A stretch of DNA of 64,000 nt from Haplodiscus bocki (GCA_965655095.1 OZ296653.1:93558001-93622000), one strand, 5' to 3'. Counted from the first letter of the stretch, positions 4,285 to 41,999 are shown. Made by a program: numbers and translations. The notes: generated by a model from the sequence alone, not told the origin.

Positions 4285-4315
<31 letters not shown>

Positions 4316-5740: not shown

Positions 5741-5829
5741 TTACAAATTACATGCAAAAAAGTGAAAATATATCTAAAGATAAAACAAAATTCATCTCTA
5801 AAGATCAAAACAAAATCAATTAAAAACAA

Positions 5830-9846: not shown

Positions 9847-11309
9847 TAATGGTAACTTAATTTGTTTGAAAAAAAAACGTTCTATAGTTTTATATCAGTA
9901 AAGATTATAAATGTACTCATCCTCAACTATACTTTCATAAGTAAATCCAGTCCTTTGTTCATCGTTAAATGAATGTTCTATCATGGATCGATGCGGACCA
10001 TTTTTTTCGCATTTTAAAACTTAAAATAGTTTCAAAAAACTTTACCAATTCCAAGTTCAAAAAGTGCATCCCCAAAATTGCCATTCTTTCTAATACTTAA
10101 ATGTTATTCTGATGCATCATGTAAATTTCTTTTTTCGTTTAACCTAGCACTTGCAATGCCTGCATTATTTTTTTTCGGTTTTGTTTAACTATTTCTTTTC
10201 GGATTTGAAAAATTCATTCAAATCCTATTTAATTATATGACAAACCTCATAAAGACACATTTGGACAACTTCAACTAAGTTTATAATATAAACAGCTTTG
10301 AAAATGATTTTTTTCGGTTCATATCAATCTTTTACTTAGAAGAAAGTTTTTCAAAAAATCATTATTCTATCGAAATATTTGCAAAGCGGCCGGTTGACTA
10401 TGTCAACACTTCTAGGTTCTTCAAAAAAAATCCGCCATTTGACGGCTTGCTTCTTTGGAGCGATGCTCTCTTGCTGAAAAACAAGAAAAAAATTTCCTTG
10501 AAAAACTAAAATTTTGTACAGTTTTTACAAAATAAATTTTGAAAGTAATTGTTAATATTTTTCCAGAGTTTTTTCCCTATTTCCAGTAGAGCATTTTGAA
10601 TAGTCTTGGCAACTTTCGTTTTTTGATATGAACTTCAAGAATTGCAAGAATATTGATCTTTTCTCATCTTGTTTAATATTTAATGAATAGTCTTTAGAAA
10701 GAACTTTTTTTGCGCGCTTACAGCCTTTTTATCACAAAATTTCAGAAATTAAAACGCTCTCAGTTTCGATAAAATTTTTCATTAGGTAATCTAAGTAATA
10801 TAATAGTATTTAATTCTGAATTAATTTGCCTAAAACCTCATTTAACACTCAATTCTCAGTCTTCGTTTTCAATAAGTTTGCATGACGATGATGATTGTGT
10901 TTTTTTACTTAGGCAAAATTTGTTACAATTGATTTTTTGTGTTGGTGTTAATTCATAAAACTCATTCAATTTTCTACTATATTTTTTACAATGGTCGCAG
11001 AAGCGAAAATTAACAGTTTCTTCGATACAGTTATCATTATGAAAACTAGATAATTTTGTTTTCTGAGTGGTTTTCCTCAATGTAATTTTTACAAAGATCA
11101 CGTTTAAATTCAATATTATTTTTAAGTTGACATTCATGTTTCTCTCTTTTGTGTTATATACTTTTTCAAAACTATTACACTTTAGTTTCAGACCTGTTAT
11201 GACTTGATGTTTATTCGGTTCTTAATGCCTATAGAAATTAGGTTTTTCATATTCTGTTTCACAAATACAACCAAAATTCATGGTCTTTTGTATTACATTT
11301 TTATTTTCC

Positions 11310-12140
11310 AATTTAGGTTTTTAATTACAATATCATTTTGTGATTTGGTTAATTTTGTGTTTTTCAATAAAGTTTCCTTATACCTCTGAGGAAAAGACTC
11401 CAGATAGTGTCTTGGTACTGTATCATCTATCATTTTTGGTAATTTTTAAAGATCATGAATCCAATTGCTAGTATCTCCGTTAGAAAAAGTTCTAAGGACA
11501 CTAAATTTTCTTAGAAAATCTGCTTTAGGTTTCTGATTTCTTTTTTGACATTTGTATTTGAATTCATTGTCTATTTCATTTTCACTTGATTTTAGTGCTG
11601 CTTTTTTGGTATCAATTTTTTCCAAAAAGGATGTTGTTAAAATCTTTTCAAGTATTTTTGATCATTTGTCAATCCAATTTGCATTCCAATTTTCAACTAC
11701 TTGTTCTTTCAATGAATCGCGAAATGTTCTATTGAAATTTTCAACAAAAGCGGCTCATTTGATTGCGTATCTACTATCTCCTATTGTCCTTACTACGTAG
11801 AAAGTCTTTGAAAAATTTATCCAAAGACTCTCTTCCTTCATCTGGTTCAATTAGCTTAGGCTTACGGGCAGATTTAGGAGTAATATGAGCAAAATCATTT
11901 AATATAAGTTGAGCAGTTTTGTTTTTTAATGGAACGCCTAATCCATGTTGACTATAATTATCAATCAATATTAAAATTTATCTCTAGCCTTCGTTGTTTT
12001 TTGATCCATAATCTATCATATATAGTAAATCTAATCCCCAAGCATTCTCAAGGTGTTTGATTACCGTTGTATTTGTATTATAATTTTTCTTAGCAGGTTT
12101 AGAATAATTTACTTAAATGAATAGATCAATTAGAAATTTT
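11310..12140 (-). pseudogene. Retroviral-like (c-int) integrase pseudogene
   Basis: YSKPAKKNYNTN..AWGLDLL..ILILIDNYSQHGLGVPLKNKTAQ..RKPKLIEPDEGRE..FFKDFL (D..D motifs of a DDE integrase), plus FSNGDTSNW near 11460-11490. Confidence 0.8.
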
Positions 12141-15600: not shown

Positions 15601-17107
15601 AATTGCCTATCTGGGAACCCGTTACGACTTTTAAAAAAAAATGTTTGCCCATTTAAAAGTGTAATCAAAAATCTTTGCACTGTGTATTGTACCCCATAAT
15701 CACAATGTTTTCAGATTTTTCTAAGAGCTAATACAAAATATCGAACATCATGGGAATGATAAAATACAATTTAGTCAAGACAACGAAGCCCGAGGAACCT
15801 TCTGAAAACAGCCGTTTTTCCTGAAAAAGACCTCAAGCATTAGAAAACTATAAACGGAACGCCCGGATAGTCATACTGGGTTCGAGAGGAAACCATTTGT
15901 TTTCCTCATGGCAAACTGGAATCGCTTGAACGCTGATATGTTGAGATACAACGCTTTCTATGAGGAAGTAGGTGCTAAGGGTGGCCGTTTTTTCCGTTTT
16001 CCCAGAGAAAGTTTTGTAAAAGGCACTTGTACCAGTGTCGCAGCACACCTACGAGGCATGCGGCCAACCCTTACCGCCAAAAAAGACCCCCTAATGCTTA
16101 GAAGAAACTCAAACATTTTATTACTTTTGTTAAACTTTCGCTATAACTCTACTATGTATTCTAACTGTTGTGCACATATACAGATACGTATATATACGTA
16201 TCCTAAACAATGCACATAAATATGGGTACGTATTTATACGGAAACAAACTGATATGGACTAGGACGGAAACACTACGGAACAAACGAGTATTCACAGAGT
16301 ATTTTTATTCGAATAGGTGCTGTATCTATATTTATATAATTACTTAATTATTAAATATAGATCCACATTTTTTGCAATGAAATCGAACAATGATTGATTA
16401 CTAGAAGTGCAGTTTATTTTCAAATTAGAATTAAATTGATGCTGTACGTAGATTGACTGACTTCAAGTGTATTGACTCTAGGAGTGAATAGTTGTTCCGT
16501 ACGTGTTCCGTCGCTACTAGTCTGGTGACGTCACTACTATTATTACTCTGCCGCGCTGTAATGATTCCGGAATCATTCCGGAATCACTCCTGATTTGAGC
16601 AAAGAATACGACCACTACTAGTGAATACGGAACGATTCCGGAATCAATCCGGAATCTACTGTGCTACTCGTATGAATGAGGAATAAACTAGTAGTGCTAC
16701 TAGTTTCTCCTCATTTCCAAAGAGTAAGAACTAATGAGTTGTTGTTATTAATGAGGTGAACGTGAGGGTGATGATTATTTATAATATTTTAAGTCATCCA
16801 TTTCCATATTTATTTTTTAACCCATTTTTACAATCAAGGAAAAATTTTTCCTTTCCCATTTATGGAACATTTTGTATAACCGTGAACAGAGGTGTCGGCG
16901 CGGGAATAGACACTTTGATGTCCATCTCTGACGGATTAGAACCGTCCATTTTCTATCGAAAGATGGGAAAGGCGCGTCCTATGAGAGAAGAGATGGATGG
17001 AAGAGTTGTTTATTTCCCGTCACAGTCGGCACTCTCACCTTTGATGCTATACTTTTCGACGGCACTTTTCCCTATTTGTACTTTGACTTGGAGTGCAAAG
17101 AATTATG

Positions 17108-17160
17108 TTTCCCGCCAGGAAAAAGTATAAACAGGAGAAACGAAAGTACAACGTCAGAAC
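17108..17160 (+). promoter_or_regulatory. Putative LTR core promoter (E2F-like site, TATA box, Inr)
   Basis: TTTCCCGC at 17108-17115, TATAAA at 17126-17131, and TCAGAAC with its A at 17156, 30 nt after the TATA start. AATAAA lies at 17409-17414. All conserved in the 3' LTR. Confidence 0.55.
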
Positions 17161-17262
17161 TTTTTAGGGGTTTTGACAGAACTTTACAGAACTTTTGAGA
17201 GCCTTTCAAGTGAACTTTCAATAACTTTTCAAGAGCTTTTCAGAACCTTTTCGAAAACTTTT
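17154..17262 (+). repeat. Degenerate 10-12-bp tandem array (AGAACTTTT core) in the LTR R region
   Basis: About 8 units such as cagaactttt, cagaacttta, gtgaactttc, cagaaccttt and gaaaactttt. Present in both LTRs. Confidence 0.75.
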
Positions 17263-17879
17263 AGCGATTGTATTGAACCTTCTTTAGAACGAGTGTACAA
17301 TAATTTGTAACTGATAAGTACTGACAAAATTTAACCAGTCTTTGCCTATTCTTCATTTATTCTTTATTTTCCTAACGCTAATACTGTAAACCTCTCAGTT
17401 GACTTTACAATAAAAAGACAATCATTTATTAATCGTCGAAAACGCTTTTCCATAGAATGGCAACCCGCAACAAAAAAAACTGGCAGCTTTGAATGAAGAC
17501 AACTGTGAGGAACATCCCAGGAATAATTTGGCATCACCCTCAAAAGTTCCTAGATCACAGGAGGACTATATAACTCAAGTTTCCGAGGAAATTGAGGGAA
17601 GAGTCACCAAAAAGTTGTCACAAGAACTTAGCAGAACGGAAAATTGTATACTAGTTCCGCTAAGAAGACTTGATGACTTCCTCATGAACCCACTACTCCA
17701 GGGCCACTCCAGAACCACTCCCGAGACGTCCCGGAATGTATTTAGTATTAACCAGGGAGCGAATGAGGATGACTCCCAGAGTGACCCTCGTCCTGAAGCG
17801 GGCCTTCTCACCTCTGGCCCAGAGGATCGCCACGACGTGGCAACGGGAGTTCAGACAGAGAGCACACAGGCGCACGACA

Positions 17880-17893
17880 TGGTGACAGGAGTT
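17880..17893 (+). promoter_or_regulatory. Primer-binding site, tRNA-Leu-like
   Basis: TGGTGACAGGAGTT directly follows the LTR-terminal CA. It is complementary to ..ACTCCTG(T/A)CACCA, the 3' end typical of eukaryotic tRNA-Leu. Confidence 0.75.
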
Positions 17894-19094
17894 ACAGAAA
17901 AGACTCGCAACCAACGCGACATAATAACAGGAGTTAACGAAGAAGTTATGTACTGCTCCCCTAGCACATCTTCCGGAAAATAGAAAAAGAACCGCTCTAC
18001 CAGTCAACCCCAATTTCACAGCGAAAACACCCCTGCGACGATTGAGGCAGACCAAATTTTGTTGGCACTTCAGCAGTTAGCAAACAACAACAATTCTGCA
18101 AATTTCCATAACAATTTTAACAGAATTTCCAAATTGCCAAAGTCACTTACGACAACGACGCCAACGTTTGAGGGGAAATTTGAAAAGTTCGAGCTGTTTG
18201 AAGATCTGTTCCAAACGAGTCTCAAAATCCACAATCATTTGACAGAGGAGGACAGAATTAACTATTTCCATTCTCTCATGAGGGGAAATGCATTACAGGC
18301 ATTTAAGAACATAAATACCCTACCCGAGAGAATCTGGGAGAAATTCTGGCAGTATTTTGAAGGAAATATGTAAAACCCCAATCGATGGCGACAGCAAACC
18401 ATAAATTCCAGAAACTTGTCTTCAACCCAGCAAATCAAAAGTTAGTAGATTTTCTTAACGAACTTCAAAAACTGGCCAAAGACGCATTCGGATTTGCTGC
18501 CCATGCCATCATTGAACAATTCGTATATGCCAAGATGCCACCGCACCTGAAAAAATCAATAAATCAGGCCCACTGGGAAAACGGCACATATGAACAATTT
18601 GTGACACACCTAGAAAGGGAATTGGAACTAAATGGTTTGGAAGCCCCTGATAAGCTACAAATAAATACTGTGAGCCACAATACTGTAAATGCAAAAGCTG
18701 ACAGAACCAAACCAACTTGTCACTACTGTAAGAAACCAGGACATTATAAAAATCACTGCCGATTGTTGAAAAAACAAAGAAAACAAACTGAAAATAATCA
18801 AAATAATTCTGGAAACAAAAGCAGTGATGCCAACACCTCTAAACCAAACGGCAACGTCAACAATCCTAACAACAACAACAGGAACAGTAATAGGCCCGAA
18901 AGAAAGCCAAAAACATTTTATCCACCCTGTGAGACATGTGGTAAGACAAACCATTCCACAGAGAGATGCTATCATGGAGCCAATGCAGCCAATAGACCGC
19001 CTCCCCGGCAGAGAAGACCGGAAAGACAAAATCAGGTCGAAGAAAGAGCTGTTCAAGATGACTCACATGAAAATAGCCAGGGTGTAGCCCAGAA

Positions 19095-19104
19095 TTTAAA
19101 CTGA
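19095..19104 (+). promoter_or_regulatory. -1 ribosomal frameshift slippery site (U UUA AAC) before the gag stop
   Basis: TTTAAAC at 19095-19101 is in gag phase, followed by TGA. The pol ORF (19107) is in the -1 frame relative to gag (18385). Confidence 0.85.
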
Positions 19105-19106
19105 AT

Positions 19107-22100
19107 ATGCCACGTCTTCACTCCGGAGCTGCGACTGACAGACCGAAGGCAACTGATTTAACATTTCCACCAATCCCAGAGGTTGTCTGGCAGCAACCTC
19201 AGGAGACCTATTTAAATAATATTCATAATGATTTGACTAATAAAACTCATAAACATACCCACACGCCCAAACAGAAAAACGATGTAGAAGCACAGACGTC
19301 GCCAATAAAGGAAACCTCATCTCAAGAATCCGGATCCAACACGGAACCACTCCTGGAAACCCAAACTAGGAGCATACCAGTACAGTGCCCTAATGACTCC
19401 AACAAACAACAAACCGAAATCCAACGAAATGGAATTGGTTTGACAACCTATGGCAATGGAGATGATAAAATTTCTCCTCCTCAAATTACAACTTCTCAAA
19501 TTCAAGAACAACTTGTGAGAGACGAAAATACTAATGAACTCTACATGCCGCTATCCTCCACAATCGTCTTGAAACGAAAGAAAGAAATGTTGTATGTCCC
19601 TCTGGATTTCGATAATGGCTTAACAATAGATGCCTTTGTTGACTCGGGAGCCTATGTTAGTGCAATAGCTCAGAAAGAATTGGACAGAATTCAACAACAA
19701 GCCCCGTCTAACATCCTAAAAATTGTTGAACCGCCCAATTTTCAAATCCAAGTAGCAAATGGCCAGTTAGAGAAACCGACAGCAACAGCCACACTTAAAT
19801 TTGACATTGGCGACCACATCTTTGCCGAACATTTTGTAGTGATGAAGAATTTGACAGGACCAATTAATGGTTTGCACTTCATGAAACATAACAGCGTGGT
19901 CAATGATACCACACATGGTCTCATCCATTTTCCACATTTGACAATGCAAATCAAAAGTGCATCGAGCCAAGCAGGTGCTAAACCTCAACTTGTTCTCATT
20001 GATGATAGTATAACAATACCACAGATGACAACCAAAAGAATTACAGCATTTGTTGACCACTCATCGGAATGGAAGACAACAGGCACCGTGACCCCAGTGG
20101 AAAAATTCACAGAAGCCGCGAGCCTAATCTTATCCCATTCAATGTCAACTATAATTGACAGAAAAATAGCAGTCAGAGTAACTAACACAACGGAATCACC
20201 CTACACAATCAACAAGAACACACAAATTGCCGAATTCTCCGTAGTCACTCCGGAGCAATCCAAGTTTATTAAACCAGTGGACACGGCAATTCTTAGTATG
20301 ATTCCTGAAGGTGACCCAGATCTTGTTACTTACCTGACCGAGCTACTCAGAAAAAATAAACCAGATCAACAAAACAATACTTTCTGGTTTCCGACACCCG
20401 AAAATCCTGGCAACACAGAAGACCACACTCCGATCCAAACACGAATCCTCAGAACTCCGTGAATTGCAACGAAGGGAAAAACTAAACCCAAAAGATGACA
20501 GTGAATCACGAACGGAATTCTTAAAAAGATTTGATTGGACAGACACGCTGCTCACAGAAACTGCGAAACAAGCAGTTGAAGACAGTCCAGTTGAGTACCA
20601 TGACATATTTGCTAGACACAGAATGGATATTGGAATGAACACAGAATTCAAGGCAAAACTCACACCAAAGGATGTTAAAGCTGTTTACAGCCAGAGCCTA
20701 CCAATGCCGATCCATCTGAAAGAAGACTTAATTGTTGAGTTCGCCCTCATGCACAAATATGGGATCATCACAGTGTTACCATTCTCAAAATACGCAAGCC
20801 CCATATTTGCACAGAGGAAACCCAACGGAAAATTACGTCTCCTTGTGGATCTCAGGAAAATCAACACCCTGATTGCAGATGATTAGACTAATAATAACCA
20901 TCCAGTCAGCACTTTGTCAGACGCAGCACAACACCTGGCAGGAAAGTCACTATTCTGTAAGCTTGATTGCTCCCGAGCGTATCACTGCTTGCAGATGGCG
21001 GACCAACGCTCAGTGGAAATGCTTGCATTCAATTTTGCTAGCAGAACTTTTGCCTACAGCAGACTTGCACAAGGTCTCAGCAGATCTGTGTCTGCTTTTT
21101 CGAGCTTCATGCGCGAGTACTTGGACCCAGTTGTCAAAGCTGACCAATGTGCTCAATATGTGGATGACATTGGAATTGCAGCCAATAATGCTACGGATCT
21201 CACCCGGAACATTCGGGCAGTCTTCAAGTGCATTCGCAATGCAGGATTGAAACTGACAATTGAAAAGTGCCATTTTGGAGTCAGACAGGTTGAATTCCTA
21301 GGCAGAACCATTTCATCCGAGGGATTATTACCACAATCTCATAAAATTCAAAACTTTTTGAATAAATTGAGATTCCCCAAATCCAAAAAGGCCTTGCAGC
21401 GCTATCTGGGCTTCATAAATTACTACAAAAATTATATTCCCAGAATGGCTGAAAAGCTCAACCCATTCTATAAACTTTTGAAAGCAGAAGTCCCAATCAA
21501 CATCACCTCAGAATTGAAAGAAACCTTCGATTCAGTGAACAAAGCACTGAGTGATGCGTGTCAACTTGCACTCAAGCAACCCAATCCTGGAAAAAACTTA
21601 GTCTTAATGACCGATGCAAGTTTCAGGAGTCCAGGGTATGCCCTTATGATTGAAGACAACCCGGATCAAAAAATCCAATCAAAAAGGAAAACGTATGCAC
21701 CAGTGGCGTTTGGATCAAAAGTCTTTTCCCCCGCACAGCTTAAGATGTCAATTTACTCGAAGGAATTTTTGGCAATCTACGTGGCATTTCTTGAATTTGC
21801 GCACATTCTGTGGGAAACATCAAAACCGACGATTGTATTGACGGACAACAAATCAGTTACCCGGTTTTTCCAGAGGAAAGCCATTCCACCATCCCTGTGG
21901 AACGCATGTGATTATGTGTTGCAGTTCAACTTTAAAATAGCACATATCGCTGGTCCAGTTAACACAGCGGCTGACTTTCTCTCAAGATTGGAATTGAGAG
22001 TCACGGGAAAGATCCATCTCAAAATCCGAGAAGATGTCCAAACAACACCCAAAGACGTGTCAACATCTTCCTCAGATGTCGCAGATGAAGAAGAATTCTT

Positions 22101-23340
22101 TTTCACGCAACCAGATAGTCAGGACGAAACTGAAGAACAAATCCTACAAAGGAAAGAACAATCCCGGAAAAACGCAGCAGAATGGGTAACAAACCAGGAA
22201 CTATCCTCATTGAAGCCAAGCATCAAGGAATTTACAAAGATCGACGGAAACACTACGTCGTACTCCATCAATGGAATTAAAGCAAGCGCACGAATACGAG
22301 TAGAGCAAGATGCCGATCTAGTATTGAAGAACCCTAAACTCAAAATACTTGGCCAACCACATGAAGATGTGCTACTAGCAACGGATAGACGATACAAACA
22401 CTACAAAGCAAATGAGGATCGAATTATCCTCAAGGATGGACTCCTATTCCGGAAATACTACGGAGAAACTGGTAGCGTTAAATACTACCAAATCTTCATA
22501 CCGAAGCAGCTTGTTAATGAAGTACTCCGGAACCTCCACAGAGATTTTGGTAAACACCCTGAAATTACCAAGACGATAATTGCATACAGAGAAAAATATT
22601 ATTACCCAAATATGGCTCAACTAATCAGCGACTGGGTCTTGTCGTGTGAGCAATGCCTTAGAGAATCACGAATTAATCCCCGACTCACCCGCCCTCCCCT
22701 GCAAAATCCGAACGAGTACATTACTGCGCCAGAAGACGCCATGCAAATCGATTTGGTGCCGGGATTACCGCCATCTGGTGGCTATGAAAACATTGTGACA
22801 GCCATTGATGTGTTTTCCCGTTATTTATTTGCATACCCGACTTCAAACCACGACGCCAAAACAGTCGCTAAAGTGATAATTAACATCATGACTAAGCACG
22901 CCTACTTACCCACAACACTTATCTCAGATAAAGGTACAGCTTTTACTTCAATTGTAATTAAAGAAAAAGCCGGCGTCCTTGGCATTACTCTAAAGCACGC
23001 CACCGCCAAGCACGCTCGAACAATTGGGCTACTTGACCGATCTCACGCGTCAATCAAACAAGCATTAAAGATTGAGACAGGCGAGCGGAGATCATTGTGG
23101 CACAAATATGTGAGCATTGCGGTCCTTAATTACAACACATCTTATCACGCGAGAATCGGCTGTGAGCCGAGCAGAGTATCTCATGGACGTACTCCTTATA
23201 ATATCTTTGATTTAAAAATGGGTATTCGTCCACAGAAAATTCTCCCTCCAGACTCGCAGATCGCCCAAGATGTGCTTGAACAGACAGAAACAATTTTCCA
23301 GGACGTCCGCAAAAATACCATGCAAGCCTATATCAAATAG
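19107..23340 (+). pseudogene. pol: Pol polyprotein: protease, dUTPase-like insert, RT, RNase H, integrase (C-terminally truncated)
   Basis: VDSGA at 19641; YVDD at 21157-21168; RNase H TDAS/E/TDN/ADFLSR; integrase HHCC and D-D(35)-E with the E read as GAC at 23035. Frameshift near 20455, TAG at 20884, abrupt end at 23340. Confidence 0.95.
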
Positions 23341-26300
23341 CGACCACTTCTCCTCGCCCCCGACTTCTCAAAGCTTTTCTGAAGAGCACACTCAAATGAA
23401 AGACGGCTAACAGACGGGCTGGAAACAGAAAATTGTTTTTTCGAGACACCAGGACTCGCTGATGATTGCCTCTTCTTGCCTTTCCCGGGACTTGACCGAC
23501 TGCAACAAAGGAGACCAAGCTTCTCGTGCTCAGCTACATACTGCACGTCCCCCACCTCAACAACAACAGAGATGCGGACAGTTGTTCGGGGCGCACTCTC
23601 ACCAACAGTTGATGAGCAAACGGTTTCAGCACTGAACCACCGCTCCCGTGTATCTTTTACCGCCTTCCTCTGGGACAAAAACTTCTCGCGGCAAGACTTC
23701 AAATCAATGATAACGGGGCCAGCTTCAACATCAATAGCTCCCCAAGGGTCAAATCTAGCGCTGTTTCGGACAGCATCTGCGGCAGTGACAGCAGTGTTTA
23801 GCATGCTGATCCCAGTCTCAGCAAAAAAACTTCTCTGTGTGAACGAGGGATGACACACAAAGTCCTGCACACACTCCACTGCCTCCTTCACCTTCTCATG
23901 GTCGATCGCAACCCCATCCAGCGACACAGTAAAAACGGGATGCAGCTCCGAAGGACCTTTTACCACTAGTGCTGTCAGCTGAAAGATCTAAAGCAGCACA
24001 TGTGTTAAATCATGAGACAATCAGAAAGATTCAGAAGCACAAAATACCAACTATGTGCAAATTCCGCCGAGAACGAAAACTGGGCAAACACGCTGTTGAT
24101 TGGAGCACGAGATCTATGGCTGCTTGCTTCCACCTGTCGCTGTTCGCGCACAAAAGAGTGGAAATCGGCCTTTGCAGGCTCGACCTCTGATCCCCTCACC
24201 CAGCGAAGTTCAAGCAGCCCATCTAGCAATTGCCCAAAGAGTTGGAAAGCGGAATAGTCGTCGCCCCCAATCAATCTCCGGGCAGAAACAACTGAGCCCC
24301 TGGCCAATTGGAGAACGCGCAGCAGCAAATGTCGAGAGAATGGTGCTCACGAGATCCTCAAGGAAACGACGACAGTCCCTACGGAACTCCATGCGGAGGA
24401 AGCTGCTGTTGACTTTCTCAAGGGACGATAACAGACGTGTCCCTTCCAGAAGGTGCTCCTCAGGAATTGCCCCAAAGCACAAATGATTTGGTAGCATGTA
24501 TGCCTCCCACTTCTCAATCACGGGCAAATCATTACTCCGCTTCACCTTCTGCAAGAGACAATACACAAAGCGTGAAAGTTCCCCGAATGCCAAGTACCCA
24601 TAGTCGGCGCGCCCAGAGTTCAGTTCTGTGAAGTTGTGTCTAACTGAAACAACACAAACAACGTGACAGGAGCATGATGAGAATTGGACCCTCCCTTCCC
24701 AAAAGCAGACTACCAAATGAGGATCGAACTGGGAGTGATACCCAAATTTCCTAGTTCGTCCCGTGAATTGACGAGTGGACTAGCAGTGATACTAAAAGTT
24801 CCTAGTTCACATTGACTGGCAATTATGCACTGAAATAAAACTCAGCAGCCCACACGAGTCCCCCAACCACCAGAAAGGAGGCCTAGACAATGCCCCACGG
24901 GCATAAAAGTGAAAACGCCGTGAATATACCAACTGTCCCAAATGAGGAAACCAGGAACATTGCCACAAGTTTCCTGGAATCCCCGCCAACTTTTCCGGAT
25001 TGTAAACGTACCAACGTGAGCTAGATGAGGAAGTGTAAGAAGCGGGACTTACAGATCTTGAGAATCAGATAGAACAGGCTGAATTTGCTGCGGGCCATCT
25101 GATCGATGTAGAAACAGCCATCGATTCCCTTCTTCTTAAAAGAAAACAGCAAGATGAAGGAGTGGAATTTGCAAAGGAAATAAACCTGCAAAATGAATTA
25201 TACCACTAGGTTGTCGCCGTCTGTCTTCCTACCAGTCTCTTTGAGGTACACCACGATGAGAGGCCACAATCCCACGATGTTGCTGACGACCTCAACAAGA
25301 GGCGGCATCGACAGCTCTCCAGTGATAATGGCACGGCGAAGACTCGTTCGGGACATCATCCAATCGCAATGTTCGGCACCCTTCAGTCGCGTGACAATGA
25401 ATTCCGTCATTGAAAAGGGATCCAAAGACCCAAAGACGGAAGATGACACCTTCTGCAAACACCGCTTCAGGAGACACAGATCAAAAATGGGATATTCCAC
25501 CAGCTTGAGCGAGTACCCACTACCCAAAAACTCCTTGTACGTGTCAGCCAGCACATGCGACCCGCCAGAAATCGCAACAAGGGACGCCGAACTACCCACT
25601 GCAGCCACAACTGACCCGAGCACTGCTACATCGTGTGTAGCATCAACTGTGAAACGGTCGACAACATCCACAGCAACCCGACGGAAAGTGCCCTTCTCCC
25701 ATGTTCTCATGAAGGCCCACAGTGACTCGCCACGCTCCTCAAATTCAAGGCCATAGAAATGATAAGCCTTTGCCCATCCAACAACCCATGACAAAATTCG
25801 GGGCAGCGTTCCAGTAATGATAATTGACTAAAAGCAAAACAACAATGTGAATCAGGAATGAGACGAAGAGGTTCCGGAAATCTACGGAACCTACCAAAAC
25901 TTCCTCTCGTGTCCAGGTGACTTCACGCTTCACTGGCCCGGCGGTTAGCACGAACTGCGCCCACAGTTTCTCGATGAGACCGTAGCTGCCTCCCATCTTC
26001 AACCCATCTACCAGGCAGGACACCTTAGTCAGGACTGGCAACTGAGGGTCGATCACACCAGCTTCGTCAGCGACCAACTCCTCTGCAAACGGATGCTCTC
26101 GATCCCGTACTACAAGAGGACCCTTCTGAATCTTCTCCCTCTGCCGCTCCAGCTCATCTTCAGTCAAGGGATTTCCTGGAAAACCCAGCACGCGCCACCC
26201 AGGTGTTTCAAGACGCAAACGCTGGTCACGGGCAAAGTGACCACGTCCCTGAAAATGCCGAAACAATTCATGGTGCCCATGGGTGAGCACGGACACATTC

Positions 26301-27847
26301 TTTCGACACAACTGACAATAAAAATGGCTGGGCATATTCGCAGCATCTAATGGCCCTGTCACAAAAAACCTGCCCAGCTCCGTTGCCGCGTAAACAGTTT
26401 TCATCCGGTAAGTTTACTTCAACAGAACTTTCCGGCAATCCTGACTTGCATGTCTCGTCTCCGCTGGTGTCCGACGTCTCAATTCTCTGCAAACTCTGTG
26501 AGGGTCCCTGCTTCAGCCGGTCCAGCACTTCATTCAGCTCTACCAACAGAAAAACGGAAATTGTCGACTAACACAATACTACTGAACCCAAAAAGGCGGA
26601 AAATACTAACTGTTAATCAAAGGAGACAGCAACTGAGCCTTCTCCTCTTCGGACATGGAGCGACACAAGGACACCGTTTGATGCCCAGTGGCACGAACCA
26701 TAGTGGCAGCGGGATCGGTCACGAACTGATCTGTAAAAGAAACAAACATGGTAAAAACTTGGAGCCAACTTGGAACAATACTAGTAAATTCCTCATTCGA
26801 GCACAAGAATTACCATCATCAAATGCCCGCTCTAATAGCTCCCTGCTTCGACCTCGACTGTGGACAGCCTCAGGGATATCATGTTGGGACCTCCCAACCA
26901 ACGGTACCAGGCTCCTGGTAACAACAATGAGACGCCCCCTCAACTGCCCATCAGTCTCCACGCTAGTCGACACTTCTTCATTTCCGATCTTCCCGGAATC
27001 GTCTCGGCATCGCCTAGAAATAACACAGGGAATGAGCCACTGATATGAAAAAACCTGCAATGTAGAAAAGAGAGCAACCAACTCTCAAGAACAGCCGTGA
27101 GAGGACTCTTTGGAGCGCGTTTCGTCTGACTCTTCTTTCTCTCGGCTTCTTCTTCTGTTGAAGTCGGCGCGCCAACCTCAAACTCGGAACCAGACACATC
27201 TGCCCGAGGCAATTCAGGCTCATTACCATGAACCACTGGTTCTCCTGAGCGATTGTACACAAAAAAACAACAACCTCACGAAGTCATCGTCATACTCGAG
27301 AGCGCGCGCAGCAAAACTAGCCCAAATAGAATTCATTGACTTGCCAGCAAAGAAATCCTAAATAGCAAGGCTAATGGTAATCGATGAAGATTTGAAAACT
27401 CACATTGTGGAAGGTGAGCGGTGTCAACGAAACCCTCGGACACATTCTTCCCAAGTCTCTTGCGGCGAAGGATCTCTGAGAGCGTGAATCCCTCAGACTC
27501 ATATCCAGAAAGCCCAACTTCGTCCACGCCATCAACAACATCGACGTCCTCATCCTCGTCCTCCGTATCAGCTTCAGTGCCCTTCTCGGTCTCGCACACA
27601 CCGCCTACTTCAATTGGTCTCTCCAGACCTCCCACAGGAGTCTCTTCGCCTCTCTCTCCAGCAACATTTTCTTCGGGGACAACAACAGGGGAAGGGGAAA
27701 CAACAGCTTGAACAGCTGATTTATTGTCCACTTGGGACGAATTGATCTTCGCAAGGAAGCTGACACTGTCTTCGGATATACTTTACGAATTGCTTCGAAG
27801 AACGTGGCTAATAAGCTAGTACATGGTGGATTTATAATTTCATTCAT
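23328..27847 (-). pseudogene. Antisense multi-exon accessory gene: zinc-finger protein, probably hAT-transposase-derived and catalytically dead
   Basis: GT-AG introns on the minus strand at 27358-27403, 27014-27082, 26731-26813, 26540-26610, 25828-25894, 25135-25203, 24644-25052 and 23988-24051. Five junctions join adjacent exons exactly in phase; the other three need a nearby frameshift. C2H2 finger CQLC..HFQGRGH at 26237-26323. Start codon uncertain; 3' end fused to IN by deletion. Confidence 0.8.
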
Positions 27848-28208
27848 GAAATTCATTATTATTTTAATTTTTAACATGACCGATTTGTCTGCCAGCAATG
27901 ACGTCATCATTACCATCATCATCATATTTTCAAGGATACATTGAGGAAACAAACTCAATTTTTCCTCCTTCACCAAAACTCATTCCTTGATTTGTTTACA
28001 AGTTATCATTTTCTGTTATACCGCCAAATACTCGACTTGAGCAGTTAGAGTGATACCGCGGGAACTTCAAAGCATCTCCCGCTTGGCGACGCATGCTGAC
28101 TGACTTCTTATTGATATCATCACTTTTTAAAGTCGCTTCGTTGATATCAGCAGCTCAAACCTTATCTCTAATTTTCTCACTTTTACAAACTCTGAGCAAA
28201 TCATCATC

Positions 28209-28898
28209 ATGAATATATCTCTGGATTCCTGCTCCACAGAGTCTGACGATTTTTACGTGAAGCAAACATCAACGGAAGGAAGCCCAATCCGAAATAATAC
28301 CCCTGCGATCCTCAATTCGACTCCGATACCCGGAGCCATGGAAAGAAAGGTCATCACAATCTCCTCTGTCGCCTCTCCGGAACCGCGAATTGTAACGCTG
28401 GACTCTGACTCGAATGACCCCACAATGCCCTATGGGTTTGGCAATCAGCAGCCGATTGTGCCGCCAAGTCTCAACGACCTCAATCTGCCGCCCAACCCCT
28501 TCAATGTACTGGCAACGATGGCCGTAATCCGAGTGGATGATGAATACAGCCCCCAGTGACCGGAGCCCTCCATCCCGTCTCCAATTTCAACGCCTCCAAT
28601 AAATGTCAGTACAATTGAAAGCTGCGACGCCACGTATACTACTACAGACGAAAACACATTCTATTCGTCAGAAAATGAGCCCAGAAGAGTCTACTGGGAT
28701 ATTTCGTCGAGCGACACCTTCGACTCTAACGAGCCAAGAAATGTGTCTGACGCCTCGAGCCCTTCCTCCACTCCGCCGCCTCCACGAAAACAGAAAAGGA
28801 AACTCAGCTTAGGGATGTCTTTTCCTAAAAGGGGCGGAGTGTCGCAGCACACCTGCGAGGCATGCGGCCAACCCTTACCGCCAAAAAAGACCCCCTAA
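28209..28898 (+). pseudogene. Ser/Pro/Thr-rich accessory ORF (230 codons, one internal TGA at 28557) running through the PPT into the 3' LTR
   Basis: The frame stays open after the TGA to ...PPPRKQKRKLSLGMSFPKRGGVSQHTCEACGQPLPPKKTP* (TAA at 28896-28898). Confidence 0.65.
28827..28839 (+). promoter_or_regulatory. Polypurine tract
   Basis: AAAAGGGGCGGAG lies immediately before the 3' LTR TG. Confidence 0.85.
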
Positions 28899-30502
28899 TG
28901 CTTAGAAGAAACTCAAACATTTTATTACTTTTGTTAAGCTTTCGCTATAACTCTACTATGTATTCTAACTGTTGCGCACATATACGGATACGTATATATA
29001 CGTATCCCTAACAATGCACATAAATATGGGTACGTATTTATACGGAACCAAACTGATAAGGACTAGGACGGAAACACTACGGAACAAACGAGTATTCACA
29101 GTATTTTTATTCGAATAGGTGCTATATTTATATTAATATAATTACTTAATTATTAAATATAAATCCACCTTTTTTGCAATGAAATCGAACAATGATTGAT
29201 TACTAGAAGTGCAGTTTAATTTCAAATTAGAATTAAATTGATGCTGTACGTAGATTGACTGATTTCAAGTGTATTGACTCTAGGAGTGAATATTTGTTCC
29301 GTACGTGTTCCGTCGCTACTAGTCTGGTGACGTCACTTTCCAAAGAGTAAGAACTAATGAGCTGTTGTTATTAATGAGGTGAACGTGAGGGTGATGATTA
29401 TTTATATTATTTTAAGTCATCCATTTCCATATTTATTTTTTAACCCATTTTTACAATCAAAGAAATATTTTTCCTTTCCCATTTATGGAATATTTTGTAT
29501 AACTGTAAACAGAGGTGTCGGCGCGGGAATAGACACTTTGATGTCCATCTCTGACGGATTAGAACCGTCCATTTTCTATCGAAATATGGGAAAGGCGCGT
29601 CCTATGAGGGAAGAGATGGATGGAAGTGTTGTTTATTTCCCGTCACAGTCGGCACTCTCACCTTTGATGGTATACTTTTCGCCGGCACTTTTCCCTATTT
29701 GTACTTTGACTTGGAGTGCAAAGAATTATGTTTCCCGCCAGGAAAAAGTATAAACAGGAGAAACGAAAGTACAACGTCAGAACTTTTTAGGGGTTTTGAC
29801 AGAACTTTACAGAACTTTTGAGAGCCATTCAAGTGAACTTTCAATAACTTTTCAGGAGCTTTTCAGAACCTTTTCGAAAACTCTTAGCAATTGTATTGAA
29901 CCTTCTTCAGAACGAGTGTACAATAATTTGTAACTGATAAGTACTGACGATATTTAACCAGTCTTTGCCTATTCTTCATTTATTCTTTATTTTCCTAACG
30001 CTAATACTGTAAACCTCTCAGTTGACTTTACAATAAAAAGACAATCATTTATTAATCGTCGAAAACGCTTTTCCATAGAATGGCAACCCGCAACAAAAAA
30101 AACTGGCAGCTTTGAATGAAGACAACTGTGAGGAACATCCCAGGAAGAATTTGGCATCACCCTCAAATGTTCCTAGATCACAGGAGGACTATATAACTCA
30201 AGTTTCCGAGGAAATTGAGGGAAGAGTCACCAAAAAGTTGTCACAAGAACTTAGCAGAACGGAAAATTGTATACTAGGTCCGCTAAGAAGACTTGATGAC
30301 TTCCTCATGAACCCACTACTCCAGGGCCACTCCAGAACCACTCCGGAGACGTCCCGGAATGTATTTAGTATTAACCAGGGAGCGAATGAGGATGACTCCC
30401 AGAGTGACCCTCATCCTGAAGCGGGCCTTCTCACCTCTGGCCGAGAGGATCGCCACGACATGGCAACGGGAGTTCAGAGAGAGAGCACACAGGCGCACGA
30501 CA
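28840..30502 (+). repeat. 3' LTR (1663 bp)
   Basis: Direct repeat of 16036-17879, followed by the ACCAG TSD. Confidence 0.97.
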
Positions 30503-33500
30503 ACCAGGAACCTCGAAGCTTCTAATTTGGTGTTTAAATTTTGCTCAAAGAACACAAAGTCCGTTGAAAACCGCGTTGAGGAAAACCACTGTTGTGAAGA
30601 CAGTGAAGGTAAAGCAGTTTCCTAAAACCTATGTTCTATGCTTTTGGGATGTATTGTTGAAAAATCCATTTCAGTGAGGTGTTCCTGAGTCAACTCAAGC
30701 AATTTTTCTCTGTTCAAACACTATTTTTCAAGCAAAAACTGTATATTGATTCCTATAACATTTGGTGGTCAACAGTGACCTGAAAATAGAAAGAGAAAAG
30801 TAAACTTAAATAAAAAATGTGCCGCTGTAAGCACTGGGCTTTATAGTTGCGAAAAATGCGGTGGGGTGAATACGAATGCATCGGGAGTGATTTGTTAGTT
30901 AATCCTGGACTCGTGGTCTCGTGGTTAATTGATAATCAGAGAAATTTGACAAAATAGAAAAATATAAGAAAACATGGGTAATTGAACACACTCTTTTGTG
31001 TTTAGTAAACTCGCAACGCCCGCTGTTTACGATTACGGTTCGCGTGTCTTTTTATCTGGTTGTAGGCAACTCGAATCGAAAATTCAGTATTATATGCTCG
31101 TCTGACTTTTCGAAACTTCCTCCATGTTTTTTTCCAAAAAAACTCCCTGCATCTTGTAGAGATCCACAAACAAATCCAAATTACAAAAATCAACGTCTCA
31201 CGCGTTCTTCGCCCAGAATGCCCCTATAACACTTGGTTTCTTGGTGAAATTGGTTCGAACCTCAAAATTGCTTCAGCTTCATGACGGGTTTTTATGAAGC
31301 CTGCAGAAACTCTCAGCGAGAATCTAATCTATCGCCCACTAATTTCTGCTCGCTTTTCCTCACTATTCCGATTCTTTTCTCTGCCGAGGAAAACTGAAAT
31401 TCAATCAAAATTTGGCTACTTTCATATTTTGGTCTGATTGAAAGTCTTTATGTAGAGGCTTTCATACAAAATGATATCTGCAGAAGTTACTGAGGAGACT
31501 GTGTTTCATCCTTTACTAAACTTGGATGTGATGCGTAAGTTGCTAGATAGGCTCTTTGCTAAAGGATCTTGAAAATCGCTCAAATTCGGCGTATATCCAG
31601 AATTTCTATCCTTTCTTTATTTCGTCGTTGGTCCTTAAATTACTTCAACTTCGCATGGACATAACTAGAGGACTCCCATGTATCACTTTTCAAATTTCCG
31701 TTGGGGTAAGAACTTTCGAAAATTTCTTTCGCGGAAAAAATCAAATGTCGGACTTTTTTCCTATTCCCAGTTTTTTTGTAAATTTCTAAGTCTTCTATCA
31801 TAAAATTCAAGTCCATATTGACCGGATGTACGTACGTTTCCTAGATATACCTATGCAGCATTGTCTTCTTTAAAAAACTTATAACGAGTGACACTAGCCA
31901 AAACATGGATTATTTTCCACTTAAAAGTCAGGAGTCAGACATTTTCTTCGAAAAGTTATGAAAAACTTCTTTTTATAGACTAGACCACCAGTTGCGAAAG
32001 TTTGTATTGTAGCTTTTTGGGAGCAACACATTCAAAAATATCCAAAAAAATCTTTTAACGAACAGCGTCAAAATGAAAACACCGTAATTCTTTTGAATAC
32101 AATTTAAAGTTTCTTAAAAAGCAACAAAGAAGGAATCTATCCCTGTAATTGAATTTAACTTCTAAGTAGCCAAAATTTATCTTTTGACTGCATGGACTCA
32201 ATCCCACCACTAATCTCTGAAGAAAACACCTTCAACAATGAAGCTATTAAAAATATTGCCAAATTTTCTTAACCATTCACTTCTTCAATTTTTTTCCGAG
32301 ATCTGAAACAATTTATCGCCTTTCTTCTTTCAAAGTATTTTGATGATGAACTGCGTGGAAAAACTTTTTACAGGCAGTTTCAAGGCATTTTGTTGAAAGT
32401 ATTCAACGGACTGAAAGTAATTGGATGTTTGGGATTCGTATTGCACAACACTCGCCAGCCGTCCGTGTAACTCAGAGGCGAAGTGGAGCTTCACAAAGCT
32501 ACCAAACCGGATTTTTTGCAACATTTCGAAAACTTGGAACCGCACGACCCATCAATGCCCAAAAAAATCTGAAAAAAAAAACGCGACAATATAGAGTTGA
32601 AAGTTTGCTGTAAAAAAGAACGCGAGATTTTTATCTGAAGATTGTGATTGAAACTCTCATTTGTGGGATTGATGAGAGCGTTGTTTTTGGCGGAGTTAGT
32701 GAGAAAAATGTGAAAGTTCTACAATTATGTGACTTTGCCGTTGGAGTATCAGCTCTTTTCCAACACCTATAGAAGAACACGACACCATAGGTTGTAAAAA
32801 TGTTCTCCTACTGTGGAAAAAGCCCACCGATTCAAAAAATAGGATCTTGAAGAAGCTGTTTAGAGTATTAGCTGGTGTATTTTAATGAAACCTGACACAT
32901 ATATAATTACAGGACTGATTTAGAGAACAAGCCAACAAAAACTTTGAAACAATCTGAACGCTGGCAAATTTTTGCTAAATATGGACATCAACAGTACTCG
33001 CTGAGCTAAGTTCACTTTCATAGTTTCGGAGAAATTGTCCATTTTAGCGCTGTCTTCTTAATTTAGATTTTTTTGTAGAAATCGCTAAAACGACCAATTT
33101 TTTTGCGAAACTTTCCTTGTTTTAGAAAACAATTCAAATATTTGTCTCGCGTTTTGGTGCCAAATTCACTATTAACTAGGAGTCAGAAGATGAAACGAGA
33201 AACAGAATTTCTTCAAACTGCTGCAAAAAGCTTCTCGATGACTTTGAACCACCAAAAACATCAAATAAATAACGGACATCTTTGGACCTTCCTGCGAATT
33301 TCAGTTCTATGTTCTATTCCTAATTGTGTGCTATGATAGTTTTGCCCAAATACCTGGAAAAAACATGGAAGACGAAAAGGCAAAATCTGGGACAAATGGA
33401 ATGTTAGCTTTTTTGGCCTACGTCATTGCGTCAAAAACACCTATCAAATCAATTAAAGAACTCAAAGAGAAATAAACTAGGAAAAATCTACTGCAGTTGT

Positions 33501-41940: not shown

Positions 41941-41999
41941 GTTACCAAAAATCATATTTATTTATAAAAAACACAGTTTTTAAATGGCAAAACACAACC

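What the first reader, a model, noticed from the sequence alone, without database searches (positions are those of the whole stretch)
23328..27847. LTR retrotransposon carrying an antisense, intron-containing gene that looks like a domesticated dead hAT transposase
Seen: the minus-strand ORF fragments between integrase and the 3' LTR are joined by eight GT-AG introns (46, 69, 83, 71, 67, 69, 409 and 64 nt). Splicing restores frame exactly at five junctions: ERAFDD|DQFVTD, LSPLIN|KLNEVL, TREEVL|SIIITG, DNLV|KKGIDG and LILKI|FRHNFT. The product is ~1150-1200 aa with an acidic disordered N-terminus and a C2H2/BED-like finger (FYCQLCRKNVSVLTHGHHELFRHFQGRGH). Inference: the downstream blocks are collinear with hAT-family transposases. 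FYGLEFEER..MRTW sits where FSLxxDES..VRYW would be, LVAISGGSHV at SxDGxxV, and EFRRDCRRFL..RSPIGQGLSCFCP in the insertion domain. LVVKGPSELHPVFTV sits at LxxxxAxxERxFS. The three catalytic acidic residues and the CxxH motif appear replaced. Established: antisense introns are not spliced from the genomic RNA, so they survive reverse transcription. This suggests a retroelement that captured a DNA-transposase scaffold as a non-catalytic DNA-binding accessory factor, for example for transactivation, anti-silencing or integration targeting.
Basis: partly seen in the sequence, partly recalled or inferred. Interest (0 to 1): 0.93.

Follow-up and report, generated by a model that had tools for sequence, protein, structure and literature searches.

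The report
Retrotransposon with spliced antisense accessory gene
A family of gypsy-type retrotransposons carries, on the opposite strand, a nine-exon gene kept under purifying selection; its protein has a zinc finger and a fold like a disabled hAT "cut-and-paste" transposase, so one mobile element seems to have recruited another's protein as a helper.

Summary
Window 16034-30502 is one complete Ty3/gypsy element, with 1.7-1.8 kb LTRs and a 5-bp target duplication. Between integrase and the 3' LTR lies a minus-strand gene of 9 exons and about 1165 codons.

The 46-nt one gives a stop; a 168-nt intron fits instead.

Comparison with 29 other genomic copies shows:
- GT/AG is kept in 28-30 of 30 copies for seven introns (26 of 30 for the 168-nt acceptor).
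- Intron lengths drift by non-multiples of three.
- Variants shared between copies fall on codon positions 170/123/309; private ones are flat.
- Shared N:S is 262:293 against 1132:444 for private variants, an omega-like ratio of 0.35. Integrase in the same copies gives 0.44.

Relatives at 40-60% identity keep the same architecture, intron positions and phases.

The window copy itself is dead: no ATG, five frame-breaking indels and a 1.17-kb deletion.

The hAT origin is supported only by fold and language-model evidence on three exons. Pfam, PDB and profile-profile searches are all negative. The DDE triad is not intact.

No RNA data could be obtained. First-stage readers flagged eight other copies in this genome.

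Verdict: a real gene, a new variant of the known antisense extra ORFs of LTR retrotransposons.

The parts
16029..16033 (.). 5-bp target-site duplication (ACCAG), left copy
   Evidence: Identical pentamer at 30503-30507 directly after the 3' LTR.
16034..17879 (+). 5' LTR (TG...CA), with a 178-bp extra segment at 16536-16713 relative to the 3' LTR
   Evidence: blastn against the 3' LTR gives 96.4-97.7% identity.
17880..17897 (+). primer-binding-site-like sequence starting TGG directly after the LTR
   Evidence: Read from the sequence; inferred from its position.
18385..19104 (+). gag with a CCHC knuckle
   Evidence: ORF translation. No Pfam hit; the motif was read directly.
19107..23340 (+). pol (protease, RT, RNase H, integrase). 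It is split into three ORFs by frame breaks and truncated in the integrase C-terminus.
   Evidence: Pfam gag-asp_proteas, RVT_1, RT_RNaseH, Integrase_H2C2 and rve. Truncation shown.
23338..23339 (.). breakpoint of a ~1.17-kb deletion private to the window copy. It removes the integrase C-terminal domain, a spacer, and the last ~13 codons plus the stop of the antisense gene.
   Evidence: All 29 other copies hold ~1170 extra bases here. Contig loose ends sit at 23339.
23340..23987 (-). exon 9 (C-terminal region; basic tail conserved in relatives)
   Evidence: Codon-position counts 36/26/55, shared N:S 58:51. Alignment A6.
23988..24051 (-). intron 8 (64 nt, phase 0 in intact copies)
   Evidence: Donor GT in 28 of 30 copies. 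The AG at 23989/23988 and the frame were read from the alignments, not counted. Shared-variant density 0.39 against 0.195 in exons.
24052..24643 (-). exon 8 (all-alpha region). The window copy has a 3-nt insertion and 2-nt and 14-nt deletions here.
   Evidence: 41/22/72. AlphaFold gives all helices at pLDDT 52.
24644..25052 (-). intron 7 (409 nt; 408-419 nt in other copies)
   Evidence: GT in 29 of 30, AG in 30 of 30. Density 0.32.
25053..25134 (-). exon 7 (27 codons + 1 nt)
   Evidence: Intact in 27 of 29 copies. tblastn finds it in relatives.
25135..25203 (-). intron 6 (69 nt; 69-74 nt in other copies)
   Evidence: GT and AG in 30 of 30.
25204..25827 (-). exon 6: RNase H-like core (beta1-beta2-beta3-alpha-beta4-alpha) followed by helices. 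Intact in the window.
   Evidence: AlphaFold pLDDT 70, and 84-88 over residues 11-60. Fold searches. 534 relatives.
25828..25894 (-). intron 5 (67 nt)
   Evidence: GT in 29 of 30, AG in 30 of 30.
25895..26539 (-). exon 5: C-x2-C-x16-H-x5-H zinc finger plus a conserved downstream region. The window has a 2-nt deletion near 26450.
   Evidence: Codon-position counts 33/33/72.
26540..26610 (-). intron 4 (71 nt; 70-73 nt in other copies)
   Evidence: GT and AG in 30 of 30.
26611..26730 (-). exon 4
26731..26813 (-). intron 3 (83 nt)
   Evidence: GT in 28 of 30, AG in 30 of 30.
26814..27013 (-). exon 3. The window has a 1-nt deletion near 26985.
27014..27082 (-). intron 2 (69 nt; 69-71 nt in other copies)
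   Evidence: GT in 30 of 30, AG in 29 of 30.
27083..27235 (-). exon 2 (acidic, with a basic cluster)
27236..27403 (-). intron 1 as proposed here (168 nt).
   Evidence: GT in 29 of 30, AG in 26 of 30, lengths 158-168 nt. Shared-variant density only 0.13. This junction is inferred.
27404..27779 (-). exon 1: acidic N-terminus. The start-codon position 27779-27777 is ATG in 26 of 30 copies but not in the window.
   Evidence: Reads show the other letter at 27777. A homologous acidic exon with ATG exists in L038.
27830..27906 (-). promoter-like stretch of the antisense gene: palindromic CRE octamer (27906-27899) and TATA-like motif (27836-27831)
   Evidence: Exact in 23 and 22 of 30 copies. The CRE recurs ~890-900 nt upstream of exon 3 in two diverged relatives. 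Activity is not tested.
28209..28835 (+). sense-strand third ORF (>=208 codons in majority frames) reaching the polypurine tract
   Evidence: Codon-position counts 61/64/102, omega-like 0.33, p = 2e-8.
28825..28837 (+). polypurine tract
   Evidence: Read from the sequence.
28838..30502 (+). 3' LTR
30503..30507 (.). target-site duplication (ACCAG), right copy

Best explanation
The stretch is the accessory gene of a complex Ty3/gypsy retrotransposon lineage.

Shown:
- The gene lies antisense between integrase and the 3' LTR.
- It has nine exons and eight GT-AG introns whose positions and phases are conserved.
- It is kept under purifying selection as strong as that on integrase while the family diversifies.
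- The window copy is a decayed, truncated member.

Inferred:
- The gene is transcribed from its own internal promoter, a CRE plus TATA ~50-130 nt upstream of the ATG.
- The transcript is spliced and translated into a ~1165-aa protein made of an acidic disordered N-terminus, a BED-like zinc finger, an RNase H-like core followed by an all-alpha region, and a basic tail.
- Because the introns are antisense to the genomic RNA, they are not recognised in it. They therefore pass unchanged through reverse transcription (established principle of antisense-intron cassettes).

The core most resembles hAT-derived proteins but has no intact DDE triad, so it cannot cut DNA as a transposase.

Most likely mechanism (inference): a nuclear, sequence-specific DNA-binding or dimerising factor that acts in trans on the element's own DNA. 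It would regulate LTR-driven transcription or guide or tether integration.

My odds:
- real, spliced, selected gene: 0.95
- element-serving accessory protein: 0.85
- hAT ancestry: about 0.6
- DNA-binding regulator as the specific role: about 0.35-0.4
For: Element anatomy: LTRs, TSD, PBS, PPT and PR-RT-RH-IN.

At least 30 full-length copies at 88-95% identity, out of 3985 first-look candidates.

Splice sites are conserved, intron lengths vary by non-multiples of three, and exon lengths are fixed.

Shared variants fall 170/123/309 by codon position (p = 6e-21). Private variants fall 398/381/370 (p = 0.59).

N:S is 262:293 for shared against 1132:444 for private variants (odds ratio 0.35, p = 8e-25). 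Shared-variant density is 0.195 in exons and 0.287 in introns.

Benchmarks: integrase C-terminal part 0.44; spacer 0.76, not significant.

The N-terminal exons are also constrained (0.51, p = 0.002).

Diverged relatives have pol on the opposite strand, the same exon order, and GT..AG at the same phases.

CRE and TATA are conserved.

Fold evidence. Language-model neighbours.

Finger residues are invariant.

Catalytic positions: a conserved E in beta1, G-G after beta4, and no conserved E at the start of exon 9.
Against: No RNA evidence. The only public runs holding the stretch look like DNA, and none of the joints listed in the output matches a predicted intron.

No canonical poly(A) signal within 700 nt of the stop in 10 of 12 copies.

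The exon 1/exon 2 junction is inferred, and its intron is oddly conserved.

None of the 29 copies examined has all nine exons intact.

hAT ancestry has no sequence-level support:
- Pfam negative.
- PDB sequence profile negative.
- hhalign probability below 1%.
- The exon 8 model is too poor to use.
- Exon 9 has no informative neighbour.

The function is entirely inferred.
Confidence: 0.6

Rival explanations
1. The gene is real, spliced and selected as above, but its protein is not hAT-derived. It would be an RNase H-like, zinc-finger protein of another origin: another DDE superfamily, a host gene, or an old lineage-specific invention. The resemblance to hAT would then be only a shared general fold.
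For: All sequence-based tests against hAT fail. The Foldseek E-value for Hermes is only 0.01, and retroviral RT, integrase, Piwi and Mos1 follow closely. VIA-align ranks Pelota, ribosomal proteins, glucokinase and integrases above Hermes. The language-model scores are in the 'lead only' range of 0.78-0.90.
Against: Three separate exons point independently, and in collinear order, to parts of the same superfamily: exon 5 to zf-C2H2_12/BED, exon 6 to DUF4371/FAM200-ZBED5/ZBED1 RNase-like, and exon 8 to the FAM200-GTF2IRD2 helical domain. Every named family among the nearest Atlas structures is hAT-derived. The finger spacing matches BED fingers (my own knowledge of the BED pattern).
Confidence: 0.3
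2. The functional product is the antisense RNA itself, for example dampening of sense transcripts or dsRNA/small-RNA production. On this view the long ORF is incidental.
For: Antisense transcription with regulatory roles is discussed for LTR elements and retroviruses (PMC7264820). No protein evidence exists here.
Against: Third-codon-position excess and a synonymous excess confined to the spliced frame. Exon lengths are fixed while introns drift. The ATG is kept in 26 of 30 copies. An RNA-only role does not predict these.
Confidence: 0.04
3. It is a passive passenger: a host gene or a decayed nested hAT transposon that a single element picked up, copied since without serving the element.
For: Gene transduction by retroelements is known (PMC7264820).
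Against: The gene is present in every copy examined and in lineages at 40-60% identity. There are no TIRs. Constraint among shared variants (0.35) is at least as strong as for integrase (0.44), whereas the neighbouring spacer is unconstrained.
Confidence: 0.03

Closest known systems
Antisense additional ORFs between pol and the 3' LTR (aORF-3R) of plant and fungal Ty3/gypsy elements: maize Grande gene23, rice RIRE2, Silene Retand (TRP28 domain), Phaseolus PvRetro13, Botrytis Boty (PMC7264820, PMC11963269)
   Same: Same place and orientation. Present in most copies of a family. Conserved about as well as the other element proteins. A promoter of its own upstream (shown for Grande, inferred here). 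Suspected nuclear or DNA-binding regulatory role of unknown nature.
   Different: No sequence relation (no Pfam PF04195 hit). Here the gene has eight introns, and neither review mentions introns in such ORFs. It encodes a much larger protein (~1165 aa). It has an RNase H-like, hAT-like core and a zinc finger. The host is not a plant and is unidentified; the only public relatives are unnamed eukaryotic contigs in metagenome assemblies.
Retroviral antisense genes, above all HTLV-1 HBZ (my own knowledge; also cited in PMC7264820 and PMC11963269)
   Same: A spliced antisense transcript encoding a nuclear regulator in a reverse-transcribing element. Introns survive because they are antisense to the genomic RNA. 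CRE-type elements are part of the regulatory circuit.
   Different: The HBZ promoter lies in the 3' LTR, and HBZ is a small bZIP protein with one intron. Here the promoter-like stretch is internal, there are eight introns, and the protein is unrelated.
Domesticated hAT transposases: ZBED1/ZBED5, FAM200, GTF2IRD2, ZMYM1, ZNF862 (DUF4371 group), and Hermes as the solved active enzyme
   Same: Order of modules: N-terminal CCHH finger, then an RNase H-like core, then a helical region. These families are the nearest predicted-structure neighbours. Catalytic residues are lost, as in many domesticated copies.
   Different: No detectable sequence similarity. No recognisable hAT C-terminal dimerisation domain. 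The 'host' that keeps the gene is a retrotransposon present in many copies, not a single-copy cellular locus.
Engineered antisense-intron retrotransposition indicator cassettes (my own knowledge)
   Same: They use the same principle. An intron in antisense orientation to the element's RNA is not removed from that RNA and is carried through reverse transcription.
   Different: Those are artificial reporters. Here the arrangement is natural, multi-intron and conserved.

Membership tests
hAT superfamily (transposase or hAT-derived protein) | RNase H-like catalytic core fold | tested here: met
hAT superfamily (transposase or hAT-derived protein) | DDE catalytic triad | tested here: not met
   Beta1 carries a conserved E-F-E-E instead of D. 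The position after beta4 is G-G-S-H. No conserved acidic residue at the start of exon 9 across relatives. It is therefore not an active transposase.
hAT superfamily (transposase or hAT-derived protein) | Significant sequence or profile similarity to hAT families (DUF4371, Dimer_Tnp_hAT, zf-BED) | tested here: not met
   Pfam found none at E <= 1-5 for all exons and for 97 family members. PDB profile search found none. hhalign against two hAT alignments gave probability below 1%.
hAT superfamily (transposase or hAT-derived protein) | N-terminal BED-type CCHH zinc finger | tested here: inconclusive
   C-x2-C-x16-H-x5-H, with C, C and the first H invariant in 8 relatives. Weak C2H2 Pfam hits only. 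Language-model neighbours are zf-C2H2_12 and zf-BED at 0.78-0.83.
hAT superfamily (transposase or hAT-derived protein) | All-alpha insertion domain with the CxxH motif, and the C-terminal hAT dimerisation domain | tested here: inconclusive
   Exon 8 is predicted all-helical but at pLDDT 52, so its fold search is meaningless. Its language-model neighbours are FAM200-GTF2IRD2-like at 0.90. CxxH is absent from the family consensus. Exon 9 has no neighbour.
hAT superfamily (transposase or hAT-derived protein) | Terminal inverted repeats and an 8-bp target duplication around the unit | tested here: not met
   No flanking inverted repeats. The unit is flanked by pol and the LTR in all copies. This rules out a simple nested transposon.
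Antisense additional ORF (aORF-3R) of LTR retrotransposons | Located between pol and the 3' LTR, antisense to gag-pol | tested here: met
   The same holds in relatives.
Antisense additional ORF (aORF-3R) of LTR retrotransposons | Present in most copies and conserved like the element's other proteins | tested here: met
   Present in all 29 other copies. Omega-like 0.35 against 0.44 for integrase.
Antisense additional ORF (aORF-3R) of LTR retrotransposons | Own promoter and antisense transcript | not testable with these tools
   Only conserved CRE and TATA motifs upstream of the ATG. No RNA run was found.
Ty3/gypsy (Metaviridae) LTR retrotransposon | LTRs with TG..CA, short TSD, PBS, PPT, and gag then PR-RT-RH-IN | tested here: met

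The most novel reading that the evidence does not exclude
A retrotransposon lineage has 'domesticated' a DNA transposase for its own use. A catalytically dead hAT-type protein, captured at the DNA level in the only orientation that lets introns survive reverse transcription, is expressed from a CRE-bearing internal promoter. It serves the element as a sequence-specific factor, for LTR transactivation, protection from silencing or choice of integration sites. Together with the selected sense-strand third ORF, this would make the element a 'complex' retrotransposon with a regulatory layer analogous to that of complex retroviruses.
Probability: 0.45. Interest if true: 0.85.

Novelty: new variant of a known kind. 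Interest (0 to 1): 0.7.

Why it matters
Extra antisense ORFs of LTR retrotransposons are known, mainly from plants, but their origin and role are unknown, and neither review I read mentions introns in them.

Three features make this case stand out:
- The gene is large and has eight conserved introns.
- It shows a clear population-genetic signature of selection.
- It has a recognisable fold, which gives a concrete hypothesis: a DNA-binding, dimerising, dead transposase scaffold.

It is also a natural instance of the antisense-intron principle that engineered retrotransposition reporters use.

If the hAT ancestry holds, it is an example of one class of mobile element exapting a protein of another class. 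That widens the idea of 'domestication' beyond host genomes.

Its conserved CRE-type promoter gives experimental handles on how such elements are regulated. The many diverged lineages within one assembly add a further handle.

Tried and rejected
1. RNA evidence. Laying them showed no joint at any predicted intron among those listed (251 were not shown). The depth dips over intron 7 are uninterpretable for contigs.

2. Rejected, because it gives an in-frame stop.

3. My first reading of the last intron as 80 nt. Rejected once a 14-nt deletion private to the window was seen.

4. Translation start at the internal Met of exon 5. Rejected, because the frame is continuous upstream in other copies.

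5. Pfam, PDB-sequence and hhalign tests for hAT. All negative.

6. AlphaFold of exon 8. The model is too poor (pLDDT 52) and its Atlas search is meaningless.

7. VIA-align searches. Only generic folds.

8. Nested DNA transposon. No TIRs.

9. Poly(A) signal. None canonical.

10. Naming the organism. All relatives are unnamed ENA or JGI metagenome contigs.

11. A full pol benchmark.

12. A spliced full-length protein could not be handed to the folding or search tools. It has no reference, so exons were analysed separately.

13. Literature. Four searches found no description of an intron-bearing or hAT-like antisense gene in an LTR element.

Frames were judged from column occupancy and per-copy translations only.

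Full report
**What is there**

The window is part of a 1.5-Gb eukaryotic genome. Positions 16034-30502 are a single Ty3/gypsy retrotransposon. Its features are:
- LTRs at 16034-17879 and 28838-30502, 96.4-97.7% identical.
- TG...CA ends.
- A 5-bp target duplication (ACCAG) at 16029-16033 and 30503-30507.
- A TGG-initiated primer-binding site at 17880.
- A polypurine tract just before the 3' LTR.
- On the plus strand, gag with a CCHC knuckle, then protease, RT, RNase H and integrase.

**Checking the gene model against other copies**

A search of the same genome gave 3985 first-look candidates. At least 30 full-length copies of the 4.5-kb stretch were found at 88-95% identity. I aligned 29 of them with the window.

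The window copy carries many lesions that no other copy shares:
- The start-codon position 27779-27777 is not ATG; 26 of 30 copies have ATG there. Nearly all contigs of the public runs show the other letter at 27777.
- Single-copy indels of 1 nt (~26985), 2 nt (~26450), 3 nt (~24328), 2 nt (~24273) and 14 nt (~24083), plus a substitution at 24053.
- A ~1.17-kb deletion at 23338. It removes the integrase C-terminal domain, a spacer, and the last ~13 codons and stop of the antisense gene. A relative shows that the integrase normally continues into a GPY/F-type domain.

These lesions explain why only five junctions 'restore frame' in the window.

In the majority frames of the other copies, every junction from exon 2 to exon 9 is in frame (corrected). 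The model is:

| Feature | Window coordinates (minus strand) | Intron that follows |
|---|---|---|
| Exon 1 | 27779-27404 | intron 1, 27403-27236 (168 nt) |
| Exon 2 | 27235-27083 | 69 nt |
| Exon 3 | 27013-26814 | 83 nt |
| Exon 4 | 26730-26611 | 71 nt |
| Exon 5 | 26539-25895 | 67 nt |
| Exon 6 | 25827-25204 | 69 nt |
| Exon 7 | 25134-25053 | 409 nt |
| Exon 8 | 24643-24052 | 64 nt |
| Exon 9 | 23987 onward | none |

The total is about 1165 codons.

The 168-nt alternative is in frame and its AG is present in 26 of 30 copies, but it remains an inference.

**Is it a real, spliced, selected gene?**

- Donor GT and acceptor AG are kept in 28-30 of 30 copies for seven introns.
- Intron lengths vary among copies by non-multiples of three (69/70/71, 70-73, 408-419), while exon lengths stay fixed.
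- I split variable sites into those shared by two or more copies and singletons. Shared sites arose while lineages were still propagating. Singletons are mostly decay after insertion.
- Shared variants in exons 2-9 fall 170/123/309 on codon positions 1/2/3 (chi-square p = 6e-21). Singletons fall 398/381/370 (p = 0.59).
- Non-synonymous to synonymous counts are 262:293 for shared against 1132:444 for singletons (odds ratio 0.35, p = 8e-25).
- Shared-variant density is 0.195 per site in exons and 0.287 in introns 2-8.
- The acidic N-terminal exons 1-4 are constrained more weakly (0.51, p = 0.002). Exons 5-9 are constrained strongly (0.33).
- As a benchmark, the integrase C-terminal part in the same copies gives 0.44. 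The spacer after the pol stop gives 0.76, not significant.

The antisense gene therefore evolves like a core gene of the element. None of the 29 copies has all nine exons intact. I name no copy.

**Depth of the family**

A search of 1.84 billion representative proteins with exon 6 gave 534 hits down to ~38% identity. All are short ORF fragments that read through the introns. The ten whose cluster sources were looked up all come from ENA assemblies.

Five contigs, all from one ENA assembly, were fetched. Four carry pol-type ORFs (integrase C-terminus, RT-RNase H or rve) on the opposite strand downstream of the gene. The fifth showed no pol among its called genes. One JGI contig shows the same exon order.

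In these relatives, at 40-60% amino-acid identity, exons 3-9 appear as separate tblastn segments in the same order. The gaps start with GT and end with AG at the same phases. One relative also has a homologous acidic first exon with an ATG.

**Promoter-like elements**

A palindromic CRE octamer (27906-27899) is exact in 23 of 30 copies. A TATA-like motif (27836-27831) is exact in 22 of 30 copies. They lie ~130 and ~55 nt upstream of the ATG position.

The same octamer lies ~880-900 nt upstream of exon 3 in two diverged relatives. It occurs within 2.5 kb upstream in four of five loci, against ~0.04 expected per locus.

No canonical poly(A) signal follows the stop in most copies.

No RNA run could be found. 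The four runs that hold the stretch behave like DNA, and the joints listed do not match the introns.

**What the protein looks like**

- Exons 1-3 are acidic: net charge -22, -6 and -5.
- Exon 5 holds a C-x2-C-x16-H-x5-H finger. Both Cys and the first His are invariant in eight relatives. A well-conserved segment follows it.
- Exon 6 folds, in AlphaFold with a 57-sequence alignment, as helix, three antiparallel strands, helix, strand, helix, then four helices. Mean pLDDT is 70, and 84-88 over residues 11-60. This is the RNase H-like topology.
- At the place of the first catalytic Asp, the family has a conserved E-F-E-E. After strand 4, where the second Asp should be, it has G-G-S-H.
- The protein therefore cannot be an active DDE enzyme.

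**Is it hAT-derived?**

For:
- Hermes is the best Foldseek match in the PDB, though only at E = 0.01 and closely followed by other RNase H-like proteins.
- In the ESM Atlas, every named family among the nearest structures is hAT-derived: DUF4371, FAM200-ZBED5 RNase-like, ZBED1 RNase-like, ZMYM1, ZNF862-like. TM by query is 0.39-0.53 over 121-157 residues.
- Language-model neighbours of exon 8 are the FAM200/GTF2IRD2 helical domain and hAT dimerisation clusters, at 0.88-0.90.
- Language-model neighbours of exon 5 are the GTF2IRD2-type and BED fingers and DUF4371 proteins, at 0.78-0.83.
- These three pointers are independent and collinear.

Against:
- No exon, and none of 97 family members, hits any hAT Pfam model.
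- A profile search of PDB sequences finds nothing.
- hhalign gives probabilities below 1% for exons 5, 6, 8 and 9. The targets were a profile of this genome's own DUF4371 hAT genes and a 33-sequence hAT profile.
- The exon 8 model is unusable.
- Exon 9 has no informative neighbour.

I put hAT ancestry at about 0.6.

The unit is not a nested transposon. It has no flanking inverted repeats, and pol and the LTR border it in all copies.

**How it most likely works**

Shown: a conserved, intron-bearing antisense gene under selection inside a retrotransposon lineage.

Established principle: introns in antisense orientation are not spliced from the element's genomic RNA, so they survive reverse transcription.

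Inferred:
- Transcription starts from the internal CRE/TATA stretch.
- The transcript is spliced.
- The product is a nuclear protein that binds DNA through its finger and dead-transposase scaffold, and acts on the element's own DNA in regulation or targeting.

The last step is a hypothesis, at about 0.35-0.4.

**Comparison with what is known**

Antisense extra ORFs between pol and the 3' LTR are documented in Grande, RIRE2, Retand, PvRetro13 and Boty. They have conservation similar to other element proteins. Grande has its own promoter and a nuclear product. Their function is unknown (PMC7264820, PMC11963269). Neither review mentions introns or a hAT-like protein.

Four literature searches found no such description.

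HTLV-1 HBZ is the closest functional analogue among retroviruses.

I therefore file this as a new variant of a known kind.

First-stage readers flagged eight other copies of the same thing in this genome. Those notes are unchecked and I do not count them as evidence.

**Limits**

- The organism is unidentified.
- Expression is untested.
- The full-length protein could not be folded, because a spliced product has no reference in these tools.
- The exon 1/exon 2 junction is uncertain.

Noticed in passing
window 28209-28835 (+): A sense-strand third ORF lies between the antisense gene's promoter-like stretch and the 3' LTR. It is open for 208 codons in majority frames and under purifying selection among copies: codon positions 61/64/102, omega-like 0.33, p = 2e-8. 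No Pfam hit for its first 116 aa. It runs into the polypurine tract. With it the element has four selected coding units.
   Followed up: partly
window 27236-27403 (-): The proposed first intron has the lowest density of shared variants in the whole region (0.13 per site, against 0.195 in exons and 0.287 in other introns). Yet it tolerates 2-nt length differences. No explanation found; it may hold a regulatory element or an alternative exon.
   Followed up: no
window 16536-16713 (+): The 5' LTR holds a 178-bp segment that is absent from the 3' LTR of the same element.
   Followed up: no
window 19107-23340 (+): pol of this copy is split into three ORFs (19107-20462, 20464-20886, 20914-23340) and lacks the integrase C-terminal domain. 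The whole copy is therefore dead, not only its antisense gene.
   Followed up: partly
L043:9190-11722: One diverged relative carries exons 8 and 9 twice in tandem (tblastn segments at 9190-10212 and 10520-11722). One of these copies has G-E-R-F at the start of exon 9, close to the hAT S-E-R-x-F-S motif.
   Followed up: no
G000 loci L046-L053: The same genome holds ordinary DUF4371-type hAT genes with intact D, D and CxxH motifs, including ORFs of 502 and 652 codons. They show no detectable sequence relation to the antisense gene.
   Followed up: partly
window 1-12000 and 42000-56000: Flanking DNA is 26-31% G+C whereas the retrotransposon reaches 46-49%. Another first-stage note places a Polinton-like element at 41435-56849.
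   Followed up: no
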